This document shows, piece by piece, positions 2,373 through 16,830 of a DNA stretch of 64,000 bases. The stretch covers positions 7,874,001 to 7,938,000 of the forward strand of contig CM106586.1 of the NCBI GenBank assembly GCA_048013815.1. The letters are read 5' to 3'. This DNA is from Setoptus koraiensis. Taxonomy: Eukaryota > Animalia > Arthropoda. How positions within the stretch are numbered: position 1 is the first letter of the stretch; each line of letters starts with the position of its first letter. The notes under the pieces are model-generated. The model ran no database searches and was not told the origin of the DNA. It saw nothing but the letters and a program-made list of their open reading frames with translations. Both the position numbers and the translations under genes were made by a program.

Positions 2373-2870
2373 CCAAACGGCGCCAAAGACAGCGCATTGA
2401 GTGCGGTTGCCACGCCTCCACTCTAGGTACACTATTGCGGCATGATCTTATTGTTGACAACCATTGGATTCAAACCAACCAACTCAAGTATTTAATTAAC
2501 TAATCAATACCCATTGAATATCAGCTGAGCTCAAGCCCCCCAGAACATGCTTTCTATGGTTAAAACCACTAGCTTCATTGCCCGAGCTACCAACAAAAAT
2601 GCTAACAAAAATAAACATCAGTATCCGTTCCATGAGTATGTCAGACCAGTAACAAATCCAGAGTTAACTCTCTTCTGCACTGACCTAACAGGTATCATGC
2701 AGTCAACAGTAGACAAATCTGACGATATAAACGTTGTTTTAGTGAGATTTTTGCAATGGATGCACGAACACGGACTAATATCCGATGATTACCAGGAGTC
2801 AGTGCTAGACTTTTCATTTGTATCAAATGGCGAACTAGAGGTTGGTTCTGCACGTTACTTGTTATGTTAA
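2373..2870 (+). pseudogene. Internally deleted, 3'-truncated copy of the ATPsyn-beta-presequence/ERI3 chimera (ORF 2547-2870, 107 aa)
   Basis: Near-identical to 4715-4929 and 5116-5346. Codons 15-76 of the full copy are replaced by TNKN, and homology stops before the second catalytic Asp, so all five catalytic residues are missing. Confidence 0.85.
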
Positions 2871-3239
2871 CTGCTTCATCTGAGAAGCCCCTTTCAAGAA
2901 TTTGATTGTGAACCCCTCAGTTCTAGCAGGTGACGGTCAAAAGATGAACAAGAGGTTGAAGAACTATCTCGACTCTTCTGAGCTCATCAGAAAATTTGCA
3001 TCTTGATGATCAGATTGTATGGCGAAATCAAGAGATCTAAGTTTCAGCTAACGTAATAGGTGTAGCTAGCGTGATGAACGAACAAGAGACAAACAAAGAT
3101 GATCGTTTGTTGTATTATAGAGGAAGCACTGAATTTATTGTACAATGATATTCAACTCAACTTGCATCCGCTCTATTGATTCCGAAGACGTTGTAAATTA
3201 TGACCTAACTATAATAGTGTCAAGTTAAGATTCTCTGTT

Positions 3240-4109
3240 TCACTGATGATCCTTGCTTGACTGAGACTTTTTGCTGATGATTTTATTTTTGAAATCTTTA
3301 AATTTCTTGCTAATCTTTCCCTCCGAGCTTCCTGTGCCTGATGATGTAGTAGGCGACAAGTCATGTGATGTGCGACTATTCTTGTGAGGTTTCGACTTAC
3401 TGCGACCTCCACTAGATGATGGTCTTGTTTGATTAACGTGAGCGCTATCGTGATATTGCTGCCCATCTTCACCTGCTGAAGAAGTTAGAGCGAGCTGTCC
3501 TGGTCTCTTTAGCATCATTGATCGATTTTTGTTTGTGGAGCCAATGTAACATGACCTTGCGGTGTTTCGCCACTCTTGCTCGAATTGGTCCACCTCTTCA
3601 TCATCTAGATTAATACACTCGGTGACTTGTTCCTCGTCGCCCGTGTAAGCGTTTTTAGATTTCTTTTTGATATGTGCTTTGTCGGCAATATGATGACCGA
3701 TAGACATCTCTTGGTGACCAGTCCTGGAGTCACGAATAGATGATTTTGTCTCCTTGATACCTCCAGGACCTTGGGTGGAAGCATGTGATTCTTGATATAC
3801 CTGCCTTCTACCGTGCTCGTCTGTTGTGTAACTAGTAGACGAAAATGACGAGTGAACAACTCCGTTAGACATACCTGGAAAGCCCGAGAACATCGTCTGC
3901 CCGAATAGGTTTGCTGGCTGCATAAATTGTGATTGATTGCCTCCCCGTTGGGCCTGCATCAGCTGCATGCCTCCTCCATTCATCATTTGATTGTTTGCCT
4001 CGAGCATACCCATAAATGGTGCAAATGGATCAAATGGGCCATGGCCCATACCGCTCAGATCTCCGAATGGCATCATCATAGAGCGCATCATGTTATCCAT
4101 GAGATCCAT
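3240..4109 (-). CDS. Mlf: Myeloid leukemia factor family protein
   Basis: GPGGIKETKSSIRDSRTGHQEMSIGHHIADKAHIKKKSKNAYTGDEE...NLDDEEVDQFEQEW is the MLF1/MLF2 core; Met/Gly/Phe-rich N-terminus. Confidence 0.92.
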   Translation of the reverse strand: MDLMDNMMRSMMMPFGDLSGMGHGPFDPFAPFMGMLEANNQMMNGGGMQLMQAQRGGNQSQFMQPANLFGQTMFSGFPGMSNGVVHSSFSSTSYTTDEHGRRQVYQESHASTQGPGGIKETKSSIRDSRTGHQEMSIGHHIADKAHIKKKSKNAYTGDEEQVTECINLDDEEVDQFEQEWRNTARSCYIGSTNKNRSMMLKRPGQLALTSSAGEDGQQYHDSAHVNQTRPSSSGGRSKSKPHKNSRTSHDLSPTTSSGTGSSEGKISKKFKDFKNKIISKKSQSSKDHQ

Positions 4110-4887
4110 TGTAGCAAAATTTAATTTGTTGTTACAGGCTGTTGATAATTTAAAAATTGATGGCTGGCGTGATTGAATGATAATTGAATGTGGCAGCTGG
4201 ATAAATACGACGTGATAGATTTGAGTGATAATTAATTAGGTCCAATGCGTCCGTTTAATACAATAGCGTATTCATATGCTAGGCACGACAATAAAAATGT
4301 TGACACGAATTTTCTCGAATGCGCACATCCGCGAATGCGTTTAAAAACTCGTATATGCGCACTTGAGGGGGACAGGCACACACAGCGTCCCCTTTCAACA
4401 TGTTTTCAACAATAGTACAGGGTGACTCAATAGAGACCGTATTGTGCGAGATTTTTTCAATGGCCAATGGCCATACACTGGGTTCAATACAAATCCGCCA
4501 GGGCGACGCTACCCTGCTTACTGAAGTGCGTATAATCAGTGCTGGCACTCGATCATGAGGAATATAGATATCTGCAGATTGATTGCGAAAAATTGCGCTT
4601 AATAAACGACATCCGATCAGTCAAAAACATTTGATAGTGACATGTTGTTACTAATTTCGATTCACAACTGGATGTTGTGACCAACCAATGTGATGTGATC
4701 GTTCACCCGAGCTACCAAACGGCGCCAAGACCGCGCATTGAGTGCGGTTGCCACGCCTCCACTCTAGGTACACTATTGCGGCATGATCTTATTGTTGACA
4801 ACCATTGGATTCAAACCAACCAACTCAAGTATTTAATTAACTAATCAATACCCATTGAATATCAGCTGAGCTCAAGCCCCCCAGAAC

Positions 4888-5640
4888 ATGCTTTCTATGG
4901 TTAAAACCACTAGCTTCATTGCCCGAGCTGCCAAGCCGTATGCCCTCTCAAAATTGCCTGCTGTAAGACCAGCATTAGCTTGCTTGGAGCAAAAAAGATA
5001 TGCATCCATCAGCACATTATTGTTACCCATAGATATGGAATGTACCTGTGACAGCCCCGTGCAGATATATCCTATGGAGATTATCGAAATGGCTTGCATC
5101 AAAATAGACTTGAGTGCTAACAAAAATAAACATCAGTATCCGTTCCATGAGTATGTCAGACCAGTAACAAATCCAGAGTTAACTCTCTTCTGCACTGACC
5201 TAACAGGTATCATGCAGTCAACGGTAGACAAATCTGACGATATAAACGTTGTTTTAGTGAGATTCTTGCAATGGATGCACGAACACGGACTAATATCCGA
5301 TGATTACCAGGAGTCAGTGCTAGACTTTTCGTTTGTGTCAAGTGGCAACAATGATCTCAGATGGTTGATGCCACATCTAGAGAAGTATTATAGTGCGCGA
5401 GAAAAAGAAGTTCCTGGATTCTTCAAGCAGTGGATCAATATAAAAAAACCCTTCGTACAAATAACTCGTCGATGGCCTCGAGGAATATTTCAAATGCTTG
5501 AAATATTGGGTGAGACTCCAAGAGGTAGATTACATTCGGCAATTGACGATTGTACGAACTTGGCTACGGTAATCGAACTTCTACATAAGCGTGGTTGTGA
5601 TTTTCAACAACCATTTCAGGGTGTTAAATTCAGAGAGTAA
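4888..5640 (+). CDS. Chimeric gene: ATP synthase beta mitochondrial presequence (aa 1-40) fused to ERI3-like DEDDh 3'-5' exoribonuclease
   Basis: 4888-5007 matches 13837-13956 at 116/120 nt. The rest has IDMECTCD...EIIE, FHEYVRPVTNPELTLFCTDLTGI, GNNDL, FKQWINIKK and GRLHSAIDDCTNLA, typical of ERI3; D49, E51, D156, H216 and D221 are present. Confidence 0.92.
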   Translation: MLSMVKTTSFIARAAKPYALSKLPAVRPALACLEQKRYASISTLLLPIDMECTCDSPVQIYPMEIIEMACIKIDLSANKNKHQYPFHEYVRPVTNPELTLFCTDLTGIMQSTVDKSDDINVVLVRFLQWMHEHGLISDDYQESVLDFSFVSSGNNDLRWLMPHLEKYYSAREKEVPGFFKQWINIKKPFVQITRRWPRGIFQMLEILGETPRGRLHSAIDDCTNLATVIELLHKRGCDFQQPFQGVKFRE

Positions 5641-5944
5641 AGCAACAAAAAGAAAACAAACTGTAATGCTCGCATAATCTCTCTGAACATATGTTCAAAA
5701 GAATTCGAGCACAACAAGTCCGAGTAATTGTGTCCGAGTCAGCATAAGTCCTATTCACCAAGCACAATTATTGATTTTGAGCCGCCATCTGCACGCTGTA
5801 GCCTTTACAGTGCATTAGCAACTATTGCAAAAAAGAACTGTCGAGCATAGCCTTGGTAGTTCATGATCATGCTTGACACCCTTAATACAGTTTATTCATT
5901 AATATTAGATAATCATCATTAGTGTCACTATAACCTCATTTATC

Positions 5945-7183
5945 ATGATTTTTCATCAGCGGTGCTCTCCTTTGCTCATGGTGATCTCATACACACTGTT
6001 GATTATTAATCAATTCATATTAACCAAACAAACAGTTTTGACAATGACGGGCACTATTAACTCAACTAAAAAAATGGATGCCATGGTACTGTTTGATGAG
6101 TGGAAATCTAAAATGATGAAACTACAAGAACAAGATGTCACAGTAGCCCCGAATACATCCTTAGGTCCTCATTTCGCACCCCAATCGAGCCAATTCGCGA
6201 CAAATAAGTCAGCTAGCCAGAGGCCAAAAACTGGTGGAAAAAATTATGCCTCCATGGAATGTGCTAAAGTAGTAGACGCCAATCAGGAGGCGGAGGGAAC
6301 ATCTCGGGTAGTCAATGAGCATATGGATGAATATATGTTGAACCCTTGTAAAGCAAAAATATGGTTTGTTATAGAATTATGTGAATCTATACATGCAAGA
6401 CATTTTGAGATAGCAAATTTTGAACTATTTTCATCCATCCCAAAAGATCTCACTGTGTATTCTAGTGATACGTATCCGACCACAGACTGGAATTTGATTG
6501 GTCAATTTACAGCGGCTGATTCGCGCACACTACAATCATTTGATTTGGATCAGAAAGGATTTGGCAAATTTATCAGGGTTGAAATGCATTCACATTATGG
6601 CAAAGAACACTTTTGTCCAATAAGTGTCGTTAGAGTTTTCGGAACCTCAATGGTTGATGAGTATGAGATCAATGAGGCTGAGCCAAACCATAAATCCAAG
6701 TTGGTGGCTAAATATCGCAAGAGACAAGACTCCAGATTCACCATATATTTCAGAGTCATGACAGGTGAGCAAGTCAGTTGTATCGATAGGAATTGTGAAC
6801 GTGCCTTCACACAGAATAATATCACCACAATTGTTAGTAGTCCGGTAGTTCAGCCATCGACAAGTCAATCAAAAGAGTCAGTGTTTGTTAGATTGAGCAA
6901 TCGAGTCAAAGTATTAGAATTGAATGTCTCATTGAGCAGTCAATACCTCGAGGAACTGAGTCAACGTTACAGACGCCAGATGGATGACTTGCAGCATCAG
7001 TTGGAAAACTCAATAAACAACATAAAAAAGATAGAAGACTTGGTCCATGAGAGAGATATTTATCATTGGAAATTGCTATTGCTACTATTCATTATACATG
7101 CTGCAATATTAATTCTGATAACAACAATCATCATCGTGGTTGTGCGATATTACGTTAAAATCCTACTGAATATCTTAGACTAA
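5945..7183 (+). CDS. SUCO: SUN domain-containing ossification factor (SUCO/Slp1-type mid-SUN protein), compact 412 aa
   Basis: NYASMECAKVV, YMLNPCKAKIWFVIELCE, ANFELFSS, HYGKEHFCPISVVRVFGTSMVDEYE, ESVFVRLSNRVKVLELNVSLSSQYLEELSQRYRRQM; hydrophobic N-terminal segment and C-terminal TM helix. Confidence 0.93.
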   Translation: MIFHQRCSPLLMVISYTLLIINQFILTKQTVLTMTGTINSTKKMDAMVLFDEWKSKMMKLQEQDVTVAPNTSLGPHFAPQSSQFATNKSASQRPKTGGKNYASMECAKVVDANQEAEGTSRVVNEHMDEYMLNPCKAKIWFVIELCESIHARHFEIANFELFSSIPKDLTVYSSDTYPTTDWNLIGQFTAADSRTLQSFDLDQKGFGKFIRVEMHSHYGKEHFCPISVVRVFGTSMVDEYEINEAEPNHKSKLVAKYRKRQDSRFTIYFRVMTGEQVSCIDRNCERAFTQNNITTIVSSPVVQPSTSQSKESVFVRLSNRVKVLELNVSLSSQYLEELSQRYRRQMDDLQHQLENSINNIKKIEDLVHERDIYHWKLLLLLFIIHAAILILITTIIIVVVRYYVKILLNILD

Positions 7184-12860: not shown

Positions 12861-13295
12861 TCACATCTCGGACACATCCGCCCTGCCTCTTATGTATTTG
12901 ACCAATCTTACATCCTCTGGTCTGATAGTAACTCTCTTTGCATGTATGGCCACTCTATTTGTATCTTCAAATATAGCAACCATGTAAGCCTCGGCAGCTT
13001 CTTGTAAAGCCTCGAGAGCATTCATCTGCCACCTGCACATCCTATTAGGGCCGAGACATTCTAGAGCGATTTCTCTTACGAGCCTTGCAAAAGGGGCTAG
13101 AGCAATGAGCTTATTCGTGTTCTTCTGATAATAGGTAATTTCACGGAGAGCAACAGTTCCTGGTCGATATCTTCTTTTCTTTCTGGTACCATCATATGTG
13201 AGTACCTTCTTTTTTGATATTCTCTTTCCTTTAGATTGCGGTGTCAATGGTGCAGACGTACCGCTGGAGTTCACCATTTGTTGTGTCCTGACCAT
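12861..13295 (-). CDS. CENPA: Centromeric histone H3 variant (CenH3/CENP-A-like)
   Basis: Histone fold [12 protein letters not shown]...[10 protein letters not shown]...RWQ...ALQEAAEAY...HAKRVTI. Non-H3 N-tail, Q68-equivalent replaced by A, F84-equivalent W and loop 1 longer by 3 residues are CenH3 hallmarks. Confidence 0.85.
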
Positions 13296-13836
13296 TCTAT
13301 TGTCGATAAGTTAATTGCAATCTAAGAAGAATTGATGTAATTTGTACGGTCTTTCATGTGAGAGTGATGACAAAAACAAAAATGTATAGAAACAATGTAA
13401 ATAATCACATTGTGCCGACGAATGCGAGTGGCCGAAAACCGTTTGAAAGTTGCGTTCGCACGAGTGTGTGCGTGCGTGAGCGAGTAAATGAGCGGTACAT
13501 CTTTCTCGAGGGGAGATGTTGGGAGAATGCCCTCCCATATGATTGAGCATTGTTCGAATCAAGCGCTTCTATAAATCCATGGCCTACACGCATGCGTTTG
13601 TAATGTCCTTGCTTATTAAGAAAAGGTGGTATATAAAAGAAATATCATAGGCGTCCATGTGTGATAGCAAAAATTCTACACAAAAGTAGTAGTGTTACAA
13701 TAATTCGATAGGGCATCCATTTAAATTATATTACATAATAATTATTATACAACCATTGGATACTTATCTCACATATTTAATTAACTAACCAATACCACCA
13801 TCATTATATATCAGCTGAGCTCAAGACTAATAGAAC

Positions 13837-15508
<1,672 letters not shown>

Positions 15509-16776
15509 ATAAACACCTAAACCCGCAATTAATTTCAGATATATAGAATTGGTTCAGCTATCATTACAATTCATATAAAGTTAAAGCTAGTTATTAAAGT
15601 TGATCACCGATAAAAAGAGAGCAATCTATTCTGCCTCATTTTATATCTCTATCTGAATTTTGCCATATGTATATTCATTCAAGATTTACCCTGAGTAAAC
15701 AAATTCTTCATCAAAAGAGATTACAAATTTGAGATATCCAACTTTTTATGAACTGTATATAATTTTCACTTTTACCTTACCTATTGGTGCACACCAACTG
15801 TTGAAATGGGGAGAGTCCAGGCTTGTGAGTTCAATGGTAATAAATTAGCATGCTATGGCGGGGCACGTCAACAAGGTACTATCAGTGTAGTGGCCAAAAC
15901 TGTGGTTTGTAAGTCAGAGAATCCACCTAAATAATCACATCATTACATTGCCTCCATCTTTTTTGATGCTTGCCGTGGACTCTGAGCATCGTCATTAGTA
16001 GGATTTTTTTTATCCCTAGCGAGTGTGTACTCGCAACCTGTTAACAGCATTCTATCAAATAATAGAATGACAGATCCCTTATCTAGTTAGAAATGACAAA
16101 CTCCCAATCTTTGACAGAAAGCTCTAAAAACAATTGTTGCCGCTGTCAATAGAAATTGGCCACGCGTTCGCTGGGAACTCTCACTAGCGAGTTGTGACAT
16201 TCAGCAGTCAGTGAATTGGCGGGTAAAATTGGTGTGGATCCCGATAATGCCAAGTAGAGAAGACCTGAATCAACAGATTTCAACTGATTTGCGACAATTG
16301 CATCAATTTGATTTGTGTTTAGTGAAAAATGATGTAGAGGTAGGAGATCTGGTCACCAGGGAGTATCGGAGCATCGAGTGAAAGGTTTGTTCTCACTTTG
16401 GTGCTTATCATCAATTAGTTTATCAGTTAATCATTTTGCTCAGTTGAAAGTTAGCGAGGTGGGAATGATTTAGAGTTATTGGAAAATCAAATGGCTTCGC
16501 ATAGTTATAGAGAAGGATACATAAGTTTAGAGATTGTATACATATCTCGTGCCAGCACCCGTCTCGGCTGATAGGCAGCTATCTATAGTCGGGGTTAGTG
16601 TAGAGTCTTGTTGGATTGAGCTAGACAATGTCGCGAGGCATCTACTAGCTACTTTACGCTATTCGCGAGCTACTGATCTATACGATTCTCCGTATACGTT
16701 CCGTGTAGAGTTGTTCGTTTACGATGCGCACAACCTTAGCACATAAAAGTTGGTGTGTTGCACTGTGTTCGTATAT

Positions 16777-16780
16777 TGTG

Positions 16781-16830
<50 letters not shown>
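16777..16830. repeat. (TG)n microsatellite
   Basis: About 27 TG units with one CG interruption; further short TG tracts at about 16950-17040. Confidence 0.95.

What the first reader, a model, noticed from the sequence alone, without database searches (positions are those of the whole stretch)
4798..5640. Young chimeric gene: ATP synthase beta mitochondrial presequence fused to an intact ERI3-type exonuclease
Seen: codons 1-40 ([40 protein letters not shown]) copy the N-terminus of the ATP synthase beta gene 9 kb downstream (116/120 nt identical), and the 5' leader from acaaccattggat (4798 vs 13749) came with it. Homology stops exactly after KRYAS. Eight residues later the ExoI motif (IDMEC) of a complete DEDDh domain begins, with D49, E51, D156, H216 and D221 present and no frameshift. 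Established: R-x-Y|A/S is the classic R-3 mitochondrial processing motif; ERI family nucleases are described as nuclear/cytoplasmic 3'-5' RNA trimmers. Inference: the fusion would deliver a cleanly processed exoribonuclease into the matrix, i.e. a new mitochondrial RNA (or DNA) turnover activity. It could replace a lost REXO2/PNPase-type function, trim mt-tRNA/rRNA, or act in germline or paternal mitochondrial clearance. A breakpoint at the cleavage site is what selection for function would preserve. I know of no described ATP5B-ERI3 fusion but could not search for one.
Basis: partly seen in the sequence, partly recalled or inferred. Interest (0 to 1): 0.92.

Follow-up and report, generated by a model that had tools for sequence, protein, structure and literature searches.

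The report
ERI3 exonuclease with borrowed ATP5B presequence
In this gall-mite genome an intact ERI3-type RNA-trimming enzyme gene really does begin with a recent copy of the mitochondrial import signal of the nearby ATP synthase beta gene, but the copy most likely replaced an older import-like signal rather than sending the enzyme somewhere new.

Summary
Window 4798-5007 copies the ATP synthase beta (ATP5B) leader plus codons 1-40 (donor 13749-13956; coding 116/120 nt). It is fused in frame to an intact ERI3-type DEDDh exonuclease. Contigs from two independent sequencing studies bridge both junctions at single-copy depth, so it is not an assembly chimera.

The interpretation needs three corrections.
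1. This is the orthologous ERI3 gene rebuilt in place, not a new duplicate. A syntenic contig of a related species (dS about 0.7) has the same gene with its own, unrelated N-terminus.
2. That native N-terminus, and those of about 20 further relatives, already look like mitochondrial presequences (1.5% acidic, 23% basic). The event is most likely a like-for-like presequence swap, not a new matrix activity.
3. A second, truncated copy of the chimera (2374-2831, ExoI deleted) sits at the ancestral position. A 1.9-kb segment carrying an MLF gene separates the two copies.

The exonuclease domain is under purifying selection (omega 0.13) and shows no rate acceleration in this lineage. Transcription and import are untested.

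Earlier notes of this scan report the same kind of 5'-end borrowing from neighbouring genes at other loci of this genome (for example NDUFS8 from citrate synthase). The closest published parallel is rice rps11-1, whose presequence was copied from atp2.

The parts
4715..4797 (+). Upstream region of the ERI3 gene. It is not derived from ATP5B and was duplicated together with the gene (it matches 2374-2456).
   Evidence: Copy 1 versus copy 2 alignment. A contig spanning 4622-4762 bridges the left boundary of the duplication at single-copy depth.
4798..4887 (+). Copy of the 5' leader of ATP synthase beta.
   Evidence: 14/83 mismatches and two indels against 13749-13836. A contig spanning 4733-4929 bridges the 5' breakpoint in runs X1 and X2.
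4888..5007 (+). Codons 1-40, a copy of the ATP synthase beta mitochondrial presequence.
   Evidence: 116/120 nt identical to 13837-13956. It shares all 7 states in which the window's ATP5B differs from the related species' ATP5B, so it was copied after the species split. pLDDT is about 50 and there is no secondary structure in the model.
5008..5640 (+). Codons 41-250 plus the stop codon: a short linker and the ERI3-type DEDDh 3'-5' exonuclease domain.
   Evidence: Pfam RNase_T. Human ERI3 is the best match by sequence and by fold (TM 0.85 by target). The catalytic pentad is invariant. omega is 0.13 against the orthologue. An exact 186-nt contig spanning 4959-5144 bridges 5007/5008.
13749..13956 (+). 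Donor segment: leader and presequence of the ATP synthase beta gene.
13837..15508 (+). Intact ATP synthase beta gene: exon 1 13837-14273, intron 14274-14388, exon 2 14389-15508.
   Evidence: ORFs. Splice sites read from the sequence. Orthologous exon 1 in L001.
2374..2831 (+). Truncated second copy of the chimera at the ancestral position beside the WD40 gene. It is 98-99% identical to 4715-4934 plus 5115-5346. A 180-nt internal deletion removes most of the presequence and the ExoI motif. Homology ends at the position matching 5346, so ExoIII is also missing. It is probably a pseudogene.
   Evidence: The deletion joint and both flanks appear in read contigs at single-copy depth. The upstream 150 nt are orthologous to the WD40-ERI intergenic region of L001.
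2832..4714 (.). 1.9-kb segment between the two copies. It carries an MLF-family gene (3240-4109, minus strand). It is absent from the orthologous locus.
   Evidence: Pfam Mlf1IP 2.4e-35. L001 gene order. Read contigs show a second, roughly 93%-identical version of 4542-4669 elsewhere.

Best explanation
An in-place swap of a mitochondrial presequence. After this mite lineage split from the species of contig L001, about 210 bp of the ATP synthase beta gene (88-90 nt of leader plus the 40-codon presequence) was copied from 9 kb downstream. It was inserted, in the same orientation, over the leader and N-terminal coding region of the resident ERI3 orthologue. It joins in frame seven residues before strand beta-1 of the exonuclease domain.

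The most likely mechanism of copying is a local DNA-level templated insertion (template switching during break repair or replication). This is inferred.

The replaced N-terminus was itself presequence-like. The product is therefore most likely what it was before: a small DEDDh 3'-5' exonuclease imported into the mitochondrial matrix. It would now be imported through the ATP5B signal, cut by the processing peptidase around R37-Y38|A39, and would act on 3' ends of mitochondrial nucleic acids.

Later, a 1.9-kb segment carrying an MLF gene was inserted, with duplication of 632 bp of the chimera. This left a truncated, ExoI-less remnant at the old position and the full gene 2.3 kb downstream.

Shown: the copy, its direction and relative age, both junctions in reads, the intact domain, purifying selection, and the native N-termini of relatives. 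Inferred: transcription, import, the cleavage site, the substrate, and the copying mechanism.
For: Copy and junction:
- The alignments define the copy and its end at 5007/5008.
- Read contigs of two studies (X1, X2) bridge 5007/5008 with 49 + 137 exact nt at depths 63.5 and 82.4, about the single-copy depth (64-75 in X1, 112-155 in X2). A contig spanning 4733-4929 bridges 4798.

In-place replacement:
- Contig L001 is syntenic (RPL18A, WD40, ERI3, SUN, CSB-type SNF2 helicase, GalT, histone, ATP5B).
- Its ERI3 has a 42-residue N-terminus unrelated to ATP5B. Homology to the window resumes at L-L-P-I-D.
- P0002 (69% identical) has yet another N-terminus, 72 residues long.

Age:
- The copy carries all 7 derived states of the window's ATP5B.
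- Paralogue dS is 0.07; between-species dS is 0.1-0.96.

Native N-termini are presequence-like:
- In 21 relatives they are 1.5% acidic and 23% basic, against 14.7% and 11% in the domain (P = 3e-26).
- There are no acidic residues in 42 residues (L001) or 72 residues (P0002).
- The mite group shares M-[IL]-L-R-x-F-x-R-x-L-L-R, with arginines at i, i+4 and i+8.
- In the three closest species sequence and length turn over while the composition is kept, as expected of transit peptides.

Function is retained:
- The DEDDh pentad is invariant.
- The model has pLDDT above 90 for 183 residues, and ERI3 is the best fold match.
- omega is 0.13.
- There are 9 versus 10 lineage-specific residue changes against an outgroup, so there is no acceleration.
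- The copied coding part is better conserved than the copied leader (Fisher p = 0.0017).

Literature:
- Human ERI3 was listed as a candidate for a cryptic mitochondrial signal (PMC3575844).
Against: - No import predictor (TargetP, MitoFates) could be run, so 'presequence-like' rests on composition and helical periodicity only.
- The N-terminal motif is rather well conserved within the mite group and within Hymenoptera (M-A-H-R-x-L-x-R-Y-P-R). That is more conservation than many transit peptides show and could mean another role (membrane or RNA binding).
- Human ERI3 is reported at the Golgi, not in mitochondria.
- Transcription of the fused gene was not shown. One run of unknown kind (X7) has exact contigs only inside predicted transcripts, but only 19 nt of its contig lie left of the junction.
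- omega is an average over both lineages and mostly reflects pre-fusion time.
- Whether another, unfused ERI3 exists elsewhere in the genome could not be checked.
Confidence: 0.6

Rival explanations
1. Relocalisation. The native basic N-terminus of invertebrate ERI3 is not an import signal; it could be a membrane-binding or RNA-binding amphipathic helix. Replacing it with the ATP5B presequence then moved a non-mitochondrial exonuclease into the matrix and created a new mitochondrial nuclease activity.
For: - Human ERI3 is reported as Golgi-associated.
- The N-terminal motif is conserved in sequence within the mite group and within Hymenoptera, which is unusual for transit peptides.
- The fusion point lies at the end of the ATP5B presequence.
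Against: - Native N-termini have 1.5% acidic and 23% basic residues with i/i+4/i+8 arginines.
- In the closest relatives they change completely in sequence and length (42, 72 residues) but stay free of acidic residues.
- Nothing in the exonuclease domain indicates adaptation or relaxation after the swap: 9 versus 10 changes and omega 0.13.
- The gene replaced is the only local copy. A relocalisation would have abolished the old function at once.
Confidence: 0.25
2. A recent, non-functional rearrangement. The full-length chimera is not expressed or is on its way to decay, like the truncated copy beside it. The low omega only reflects the time before the fusion.
For: - The locus is rearranged: there is a second truncated copy and a 1.9-kb insertion.
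- No RNA evidence could be obtained.
- The gene now lies behind a foreign segment, with only about 170 nt of its former upstream sequence.
Against: - The 250-codon frame is open, with all catalytic and 27 invariant family positions kept.
- There are no indels in the 120 copied coding nt, against two in the 88-90-nt leader.
- The rate equals that of the sister lineage.
- The fusion predates the tandem duplication, and the frame has stayed open since.
- Exact contigs of run X7 lie only within predicted transcripts, including 4989-5201 and 5518-5738.
Confidence: 0.1
3. Assembly artefact. The junction between the ATP5B-like and ERI3 sequence was created by mis-joining reads at the shared sequence.
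For: The region contains three copies of the leader and start, a situation in which assemblers can err. Two synonymous letters of the assembly (5223, 5265) are not seen in the read contigs.
Against: Exact contigs bridge 5007/5008, 4798, 4715 and 5346 in runs of two different studies. Copy-specific parts are at single-copy depth and parts shared by the two copies at double depth. The bridging contig carries the ERI3-specific G at 4989.
Confidence: 0.02

Closest known systems
Rice rps11-1, whose presequence was copied from atp2 (ATP synthase beta); Kadowaki et al. 1996 EMBO J, as cited in PMC2631504
   Same: A mitochondrial targeting presequence was obtained by duplicating that of an existing nuclear gene, and the donor is the same gene family (F1 beta subunit). 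The donor stays intact.
   Different: In rice the recipient was a gene newly transferred from the organelle that had no signal. Here the recipient is an old nuclear gene of an animal whose orthologues already carry a presequence-like N-terminus, so this is a replacement. Donor and recipient are 9 kb apart on the same strand, and the leader came along.
Human ERI3 (PRNPIP/PINT1; PDB 7k05, 2xri)
   Same: The best match by sequence (E 1.2e-35, about 38% identity) and by fold (TM 0.85 by target). It has the same DEDDh pentad and a single-domain nuclease without a SAP or GRF module.
   Different: The human protein has a long, different N-terminal region and is reported at the Golgi. A mitochondrial form is only a computational candidate (PMC3575844). 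The mite protein has 40 residues of ATP5B presequence instead.
REXO2 (oligoribonuclease), the known DEDDh 3'-5' exonuclease of animal mitochondria (from general knowledge, not tested here)
   Same: A small DEDDh exonuclease that works in mitochondria on 3' ends of short RNA. This is the kind of job a matrix ERI3 would be expected to do.
   Different: It belongs to a different DEDDh subfamily. No REXO2-family chain is among the 8 solved-structure matches at E up to 0.001, all of which are ERI1, ERI2, ERI3 or CRN-4. Whether this mite has REXO2 was not checked.
Other 5'-end captures noted by this scan in the same genome (NDUFS8 from citrate synthase, LRPPRC from STOML2, PNPase from eIF3g, DAD1 from akirin)
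   Same: A copy of a neighbouring gene's leader and first codons replaces the recipient's own start. Several cases involve mitochondrial presequences.
   Different: Those are AI notes on other loci that I did not re-test. Several are inverted copies and include promoter sequence. Here the copy is direct, short (about 210 bp), and leaves upstream sequence that is not derived from ATP5B in place.

Membership tests
ERI3-type DEDDh 3'-5' exonuclease (ERI1 family, Pfam RNase_T PF00929) | RNase_T/DEDDh domain scoring above the curated threshold | tested here: met
   69.7 bits against a cut-off of 24; residues 48-228 cover profile positions 3-163 of 164.
ERI3-type DEDDh 3'-5' exonuclease (ERI1 family, Pfam RNase_T PF00929) | Catalytic pentad D-E-D-H-D (ExoI, ExoII, ExoIII) | tested here: met
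   D49, E51, D156, H216 and D221 are present. They align to the human ERI3 motifs and are invariant in 35 sequences.
ERI3-type DEDDh 3'-5' exonuclease (ERI1 family, Pfam RNase_T PF00929) | Closer to ERI3 than to ERI1, ERI2 or CRN-4, with no SAP or GRF accessory domain | tested here: met
   E-values are ERI3 1e-35, CRN-4 1e-26, ERI1 5e-19 and ERI2 2.5e-17. The top fold hits are ERI3. The nearest named homologues are 'ERI1 exoribonuclease 3'. There is only one Pfam domain. No tree was built.
ERI3-type DEDDh 3'-5' exonuclease (ERI1 family, Pfam RNase_T PF00929) | 3'-5' exonuclease activity | not testable with these tools
   Needs recombinant mature protein and a D49A/E51A control.
Cleavable mitochondrial matrix presequence | N-terminal, basic, nearly free of acidic residues, unstructured or amphipathic | tested here: met
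   The 47 residues before the ExoI motif (40 of them ATP5B-derived) hold 7 K+R and one acidic residue, E34. pLDDT is about 50 with no fixed structure.
Cleavable mitochondrial matrix presequence | Derived from a bona fide matrix protein's presequence | tested here: met
   38 of 40 residues are identical to the N-terminus of the window's own ATP synthase beta, ending just before the conserved mature part. That this stretch is the import signal in the mite is inferred from orthology.
Cleavable mitochondrial matrix presequence | Processing-peptidase motif at the end of the signal | tested here: inconclusive
The sequence is Q-K-R-Y-A-S. Arginine at -2 of a Y|A cut fits the R-2 class. Residues after the cut changed from A-Q-A to I-S-T. 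No cleavage predictor was available.
Cleavable mitochondrial matrix presequence | Import into mitochondria and cleavage | not testable with these tools
   Needs reporter fusions or in vitro import.
Presequence acquisition by duplication of an existing targeting signal (Kadowaki type) | An intact donor gene carries the same sequence, and the recipient's orthologues lack it | tested here: met
   The donor ATP5B is intact. L001 and P0002 ERI3 have unrelated N-termini.
Presequence acquisition by duplication of an existing targeting signal (Kadowaki type) | The junction exists in the organism's DNA, not only in one assembly | tested here: met
   Bridging contigs occur in runs of two studies.
Presequence acquisition by duplication of an existing targeting signal (Kadowaki type) | The recipient lacked a targeting signal before the event | tested here: not met
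   Orthologues carry presequence-like N-termini. This is a replacement, not a first acquisition.
Presequence acquisition by duplication of an existing targeting signal (Kadowaki type) | The fused message is transcribed | tested here: inconclusive
   No run of known RNA kind holds the locus. The contig pattern of run X7 looks transcript-like, but its kind is unknown and only 19 nt lie left of the junction. Exact-protein look-ups were blank.

The most novel reading that the evidence does not exclude
The short invertebrate form of ERI3 is a so far unrecognised mitochondrial matrix exonuclease. This mite has performed the natural test: its native N-terminus was exchanged for a textbook matrix presequence without any sign of relaxed or altered selection on the enzyme. 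In addition, the event is one of many in eriophyoid mites, where a frequent local templated-insertion process overwrites gene starts with the 5' cassettes of neighbours. Mitochondrial genes would survive this only when the donor is also mitochondrial.
Probability: 0.4. Interest if true: 0.7.

Novelty: new member of a known kind. Interest (0 to 1): 0.5.

Why it matters
- It is a clean, datable animal example of a mitochondrial import signal copied from one nuclear gene onto another. The donor, the recipient, the unmodified orthologue and a later remnant are all visible.
- It gives indirect support to the old, untested suggestion that ERI3 has a mitochondrial role. It also offers simple experiments: localisation of native versus chimeric N-termini.
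- Together with the scan's other notes, it points to an unusually active process of 5'-end replacement in a miniaturised mite genome. The Aculops lycopersici genome paper has no hit for presequence, promoter or segmental duplication, and mentions chimeric genes only as merged-transcript artefacts.
- It does not, on present evidence, reveal a new mitochondrial pathway.

Tried and rejected
- A shared promoter motif at the 5' breakpoint: CAACCATTGGAT is not enriched in the window (12 matches with up to 2 mismatches, 8.7 expected). Exact copies are only the three homologous ones. A possible microhomology with L001 (caaccatcgattg) remains an untested impression.
- Polarising the leader changes with L001 ATP5B as outgroup: the leaders are about 42% different, so the result (7/4/3) is unreliable.
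- Exact-sequence look-ups of the 250-aa protein and of the 107-aa truncated ORF in public assemblies: nothing on record. The read contigs break inside the gene at the repeat borders, which may explain this.
- DNA of P0002's contig could not be fetched, so no third codon sequence was available for branch-specific dN/dS. I used a protein relative-rate test instead.
- RNA evidence: the kinds of the runs offered are not on record. X2 and X5 cover intergenic DNA evenly and behave as DNA. Only X7 looks transcript-like. The single read-laying run was already used.
- Retroposition as the copying mechanism was considered and set aside. The copy is a 5' fragment that ends inside exon 1, with no poly(A) or 3' sequence, and the donor lies 9 kb away in cis.
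- A tandem duplication spanning ERI3 to ATP5B would also create this junction, but it would need a second copy of the four intervening genes. None is present.
- Findings search for another ERI or DEDDh gene in the genome: no notes.
Full report
**1. What is in the sequence**

ORF 4888-5640 (+) encodes 250 residues. Aligned with the region upstream of and into the ATP synthase beta (ATP5B) gene, window 4798-5007 matches 13749-13956.
- The 120 coding nucleotides differ at four sites: codons 4 and 5 non-synonymous (I>M, A>V), codons 23 and 34 synonymous.
- The 88-90-nt leader is less alike: 14 of 83 aligned positions differ, and there are two indels.
- Similarity stops exactly after codon 40 (K-R-Y-A-S) and is absent upstream of 4798.
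- A 42-nt core of the presequence occurs nowhere else in the 64 kb, and none is expected by chance.

One detail is not. The arginine stands directly before the tyrosine (Q-K-R-Y-A-S), so the context is of the R-2 type (R-Y|A-S), not R-x-Y|A/S.

**2. The enzyme part**

- Residues 48-228 match Pfam RNase_T (5.5e-19).
- The best solved relatives are human ERI3 (1.2e-35), then CRN-4, ERI1 and ERI2.
- The nearest named proteins are invertebrate 'ERI1 exoribonuclease 3'.
- D49, E51, D156, H216 and D221 are present. They are among the 27 invariant columns of a 35-sequence alignment.
- An AlphaFold model built on that alignment has pLDDT above 90 for 183 residues. Residues 1-40 are unstructured at pLDDT about 50, and strand beta-1 starts at residue 44.
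- The model's best fold matches are the ERI3 crystal structures (TM 0.85 by target).

The domain is intact and of the ERI3 type.

**3. It is not an assembly chimera**

I laid Logan contigs of four runs on 4200-6100. In X1 and X2, which come from different samples and studies:
- An exact 186-nt contig covers 4959-5144. It puts 49 nt left and 137 nt right of the 5007/5008 junction and includes the ERI3-specific G at 4989. Its depth is 63.5 (X1) and 82.4 (X2), about the single-copy depth (64-75 in X1, 112-155 in X2).
- A 197-nt contig (4733-4929) bridges the 5' breakpoint at 4798.
- X2 reads A at 4956, the ATP5B state. One of the four coding differences is therefore still polymorphic between samples.

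**4. The gene is the resident orthologue, rebuilt in place**

The best database hit (P0001, 77% identity) and an ATP5B fragment (P0027) lie on one 21.9-kb contig of another species. That contig (L001) has the same gene order as the window: RPL18A, WD40, ERI3, SUN, CSB-type SNF2 helicase, GalT, histone, ATP5B.

In L001 the ERI3 reading frame opens at 2368 with a 42-residue N-terminus that has no similarity to ATP5B. DNA and protein homology with the window resumes at L-L-P-I-D, just before ExoI. A third relative (P0002, 69% identity) has yet another N-terminus of 72 residues.

The copied presequence shares all seven states in which the window's ATP5B differs from L001's ATP5B. The copy was therefore made in the window's lineage after the split. 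The two species differ by dS of roughly 0.25-0.96 per gene, and the paralogous presequences by dS 0.07.

**5. A second, truncated copy**

Window 2374-2831 is 98-99% identical to 4715-4934 plus 5115-5346.
- It lacks 180 nt (codons 17-76, including ExoI), with a short filler that repeats the neighbouring AACAAAAA. It also ends before ExoIII.
- Its ORF is 107 codons.
- It lies at the ancestral place. The 150 nt next to the WD40 gene are orthologous to the WD40-ERI3 spacer of L001.
- Between the copies lie 1,883 bp with an MLF-family gene on the minus strand. This segment is absent from L001.
- Read contigs show the deletion joint and both flanks of this copy at single-copy depth, and the parts shared by both copies at double depth.

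Both copies carry the same derived leader, so the order of events is: fusion first, then insertion of the MLF segment with duplication of 632 bp, then the 180-nt deletion.

**6. Was the enzyme mitochondrial before?**

I could not run an import predictor, so this rests on composition and pattern.
- In 21 relatives with a complete start, the N-terminal extension (531 residues in all) is 1.5% acidic and 23% basic. The domain is 14.7% acidic and 11% basic (P = 3e-26).
- L001 has no acidic residue in 42 positions, and P0002 none in 72 (P = 1e-3 and 1e-5).
- About twenty mite-group proteins begin M-[IL]-L-R-x-F-x-R-x-L-L-R, with arginines at i, i+4 and i+8, the pattern of a positively charged amphipathic helix.
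- Hymenopteran ERI3 proteins start with a comparable roughly 29-residue basic extension.
- Among the three closest species the N-terminus changes completely in sequence and length but keeps this composition, as transit peptides do.
- A published screen lists human ERI3 among proteins with a candidate cryptic mitochondrial signal exposed by a downstream start codon. It names ERI3 as worth testing in mitochondrial nucleic-acid metabolism (PMC3575844).

Against this, human ERI3 is reported at the Golgi (Ward et al. 2016, cited in PMC8224014). The sequence conservation of the motif within groups could also point to another role.

I put a like-for-like swap at about 0.6 and a true relocalisation at about 0.25.

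**7. Selection**

- For the mature part, window against L001 gives dN 0.126, dS 0.94 and omega 0.13. Neighbouring genes give omega 0.02-0.09.
- With P0002 as outgroup, the window lineage has 9 unique residue changes and the L001 lineage 10. The lineage with the borrowed signal is not evolving faster.
- The copied coding part has no indel and 3.3% substitutions. The leader has 17% substitutions and two indels (Fisher p = 0.0017). This is as expected if the presequence is constrained in at least one of the two genes. All four coding changes fall on the ERI3 branch, which is too few to test selection.

**8. How it probably arose and works**

The donor lies 9 kb away in cis and in the same orientation. 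The copy is a 5' fragment ending inside exon 1. It carries no 3' or poly(A) sequence, and the four genes in between are single-copy. Retroposition and a large tandem duplication are therefore unlikely. I favour a short templated insertion during break repair or replication, which is an inference. The filler at the 180-nt deletion and the nearby duplicative insertion of the MLF segment show that such events occurred at this locus.

Earlier notes of this scan call the organism an eriophyoid gall mite. They list many similar captures of a neighbour's 5' cassette, several involving mitochondrial presequences. I did not re-test them, but they make a genome-wide process plausible.

The expected product is a precursor imported by the ATP5B signal and cut near R37-Y38|A39. 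That leaves about five residues before strand beta-1. All of this is inferred.

**9. Comparison with what is known**

The closest published precedent is rice rps11-1, whose presequence was copied from atp2 (Kadowaki et al. 1996, cited in PMC2631504). The differences are that the present case is in an animal and that it replaces an existing signal rather than supplying a missing one. The genome paper on the eriophyoid Aculops lycopersici has no hit for presequence, promoter or segmental duplication, and mentions chimeric genes only as merged-transcript artefacts.

**10. Open points**

- Transcription is not shown. Run X7 (kind unknown) has exact contigs only inside predicted transcripts: 3112-4273 over the MLF gene, 4989-5201 and 5518-5738 in ERI3, and from 5864 in the SUN gene. 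None lies in the spacers, which is what RNA would give. Only 19 nt of its contig lie left of the junction.
- Import, cleavage, activity and substrate are untested.
- Whether another ERI3 or REXO2 exists elsewhere in the genome is untested.

**Verdict:** The finding is a new instance of a known evolutionary process, and of moderate interest.

Noticed in passing
window 2832-4714: A 1.9-kb segment carrying an intact-looking MLF-family gene (3240-4109, minus strand, Pfam Mlf1IP 2.4e-35) sits between the two copies of the chimera and is absent from the orthologous locus L001. Read contigs show a second version of 4542-4669 with 7 differences, a 216-nt skip (4325>4542 with a 17-nt filler) and a divergent continuation after 4669, all at single-copy depth. 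The segment probably has a paralogous source elsewhere in the genome.
   Followed up: partly
window 5223 and 5265: All read contigs of X1, X2 and X5 show A and T here, the letters of the truncated copy, at double depth. The assembly's full-length copy has G and C. Both sites are synonymous. This could be strain polymorphism, gene conversion between the copies, or a consensus error.
   Followed up: no
window 4956: Run X2 reads A (the ATP5B state, codon 23 TTA) where the window has G. One of the four differences between the borrowed and the donor presequence is therefore polymorphic between samples, or was erased by conversion.
   Followed up: no
window 2589-2612: The 180-nt deletion in the truncated copy is bridged by a short filler that repeats the adjacent AACAAAAA(T) motif. 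This looks like a templated insertion of the kind left by microhomology-mediated end joining.
   Followed up: no
window 5945-7183 versus L001 4286-5935: The SUN-domain gene next to ERI3 gives a 412-residue ORF in the window but a 549-residue called product in the related species (378 residues aligned, 89% identical). The spacer after ERI3 is 0.3 kb in the window and 1.2 kb in L001. The cause could be a different start, an intron or a further rearrangement.
   Followed up: no
window 12861-13295 (minus) and 13296-13836: A histone-fold gene (H3-like, 144 residues, 98.6% identical to the L001 orthologue) is divergently arranged with ATP5B across a 541-nt spacer. Only the 88-90 nt next to the ATP5B start codon were copied to ERI3.
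   Followed up: no
window about 16750-16800: An (AC)n/(GT)n microsatellite produces spurious TH/CV-repeat ORFs on both strands.
   Followed up: no
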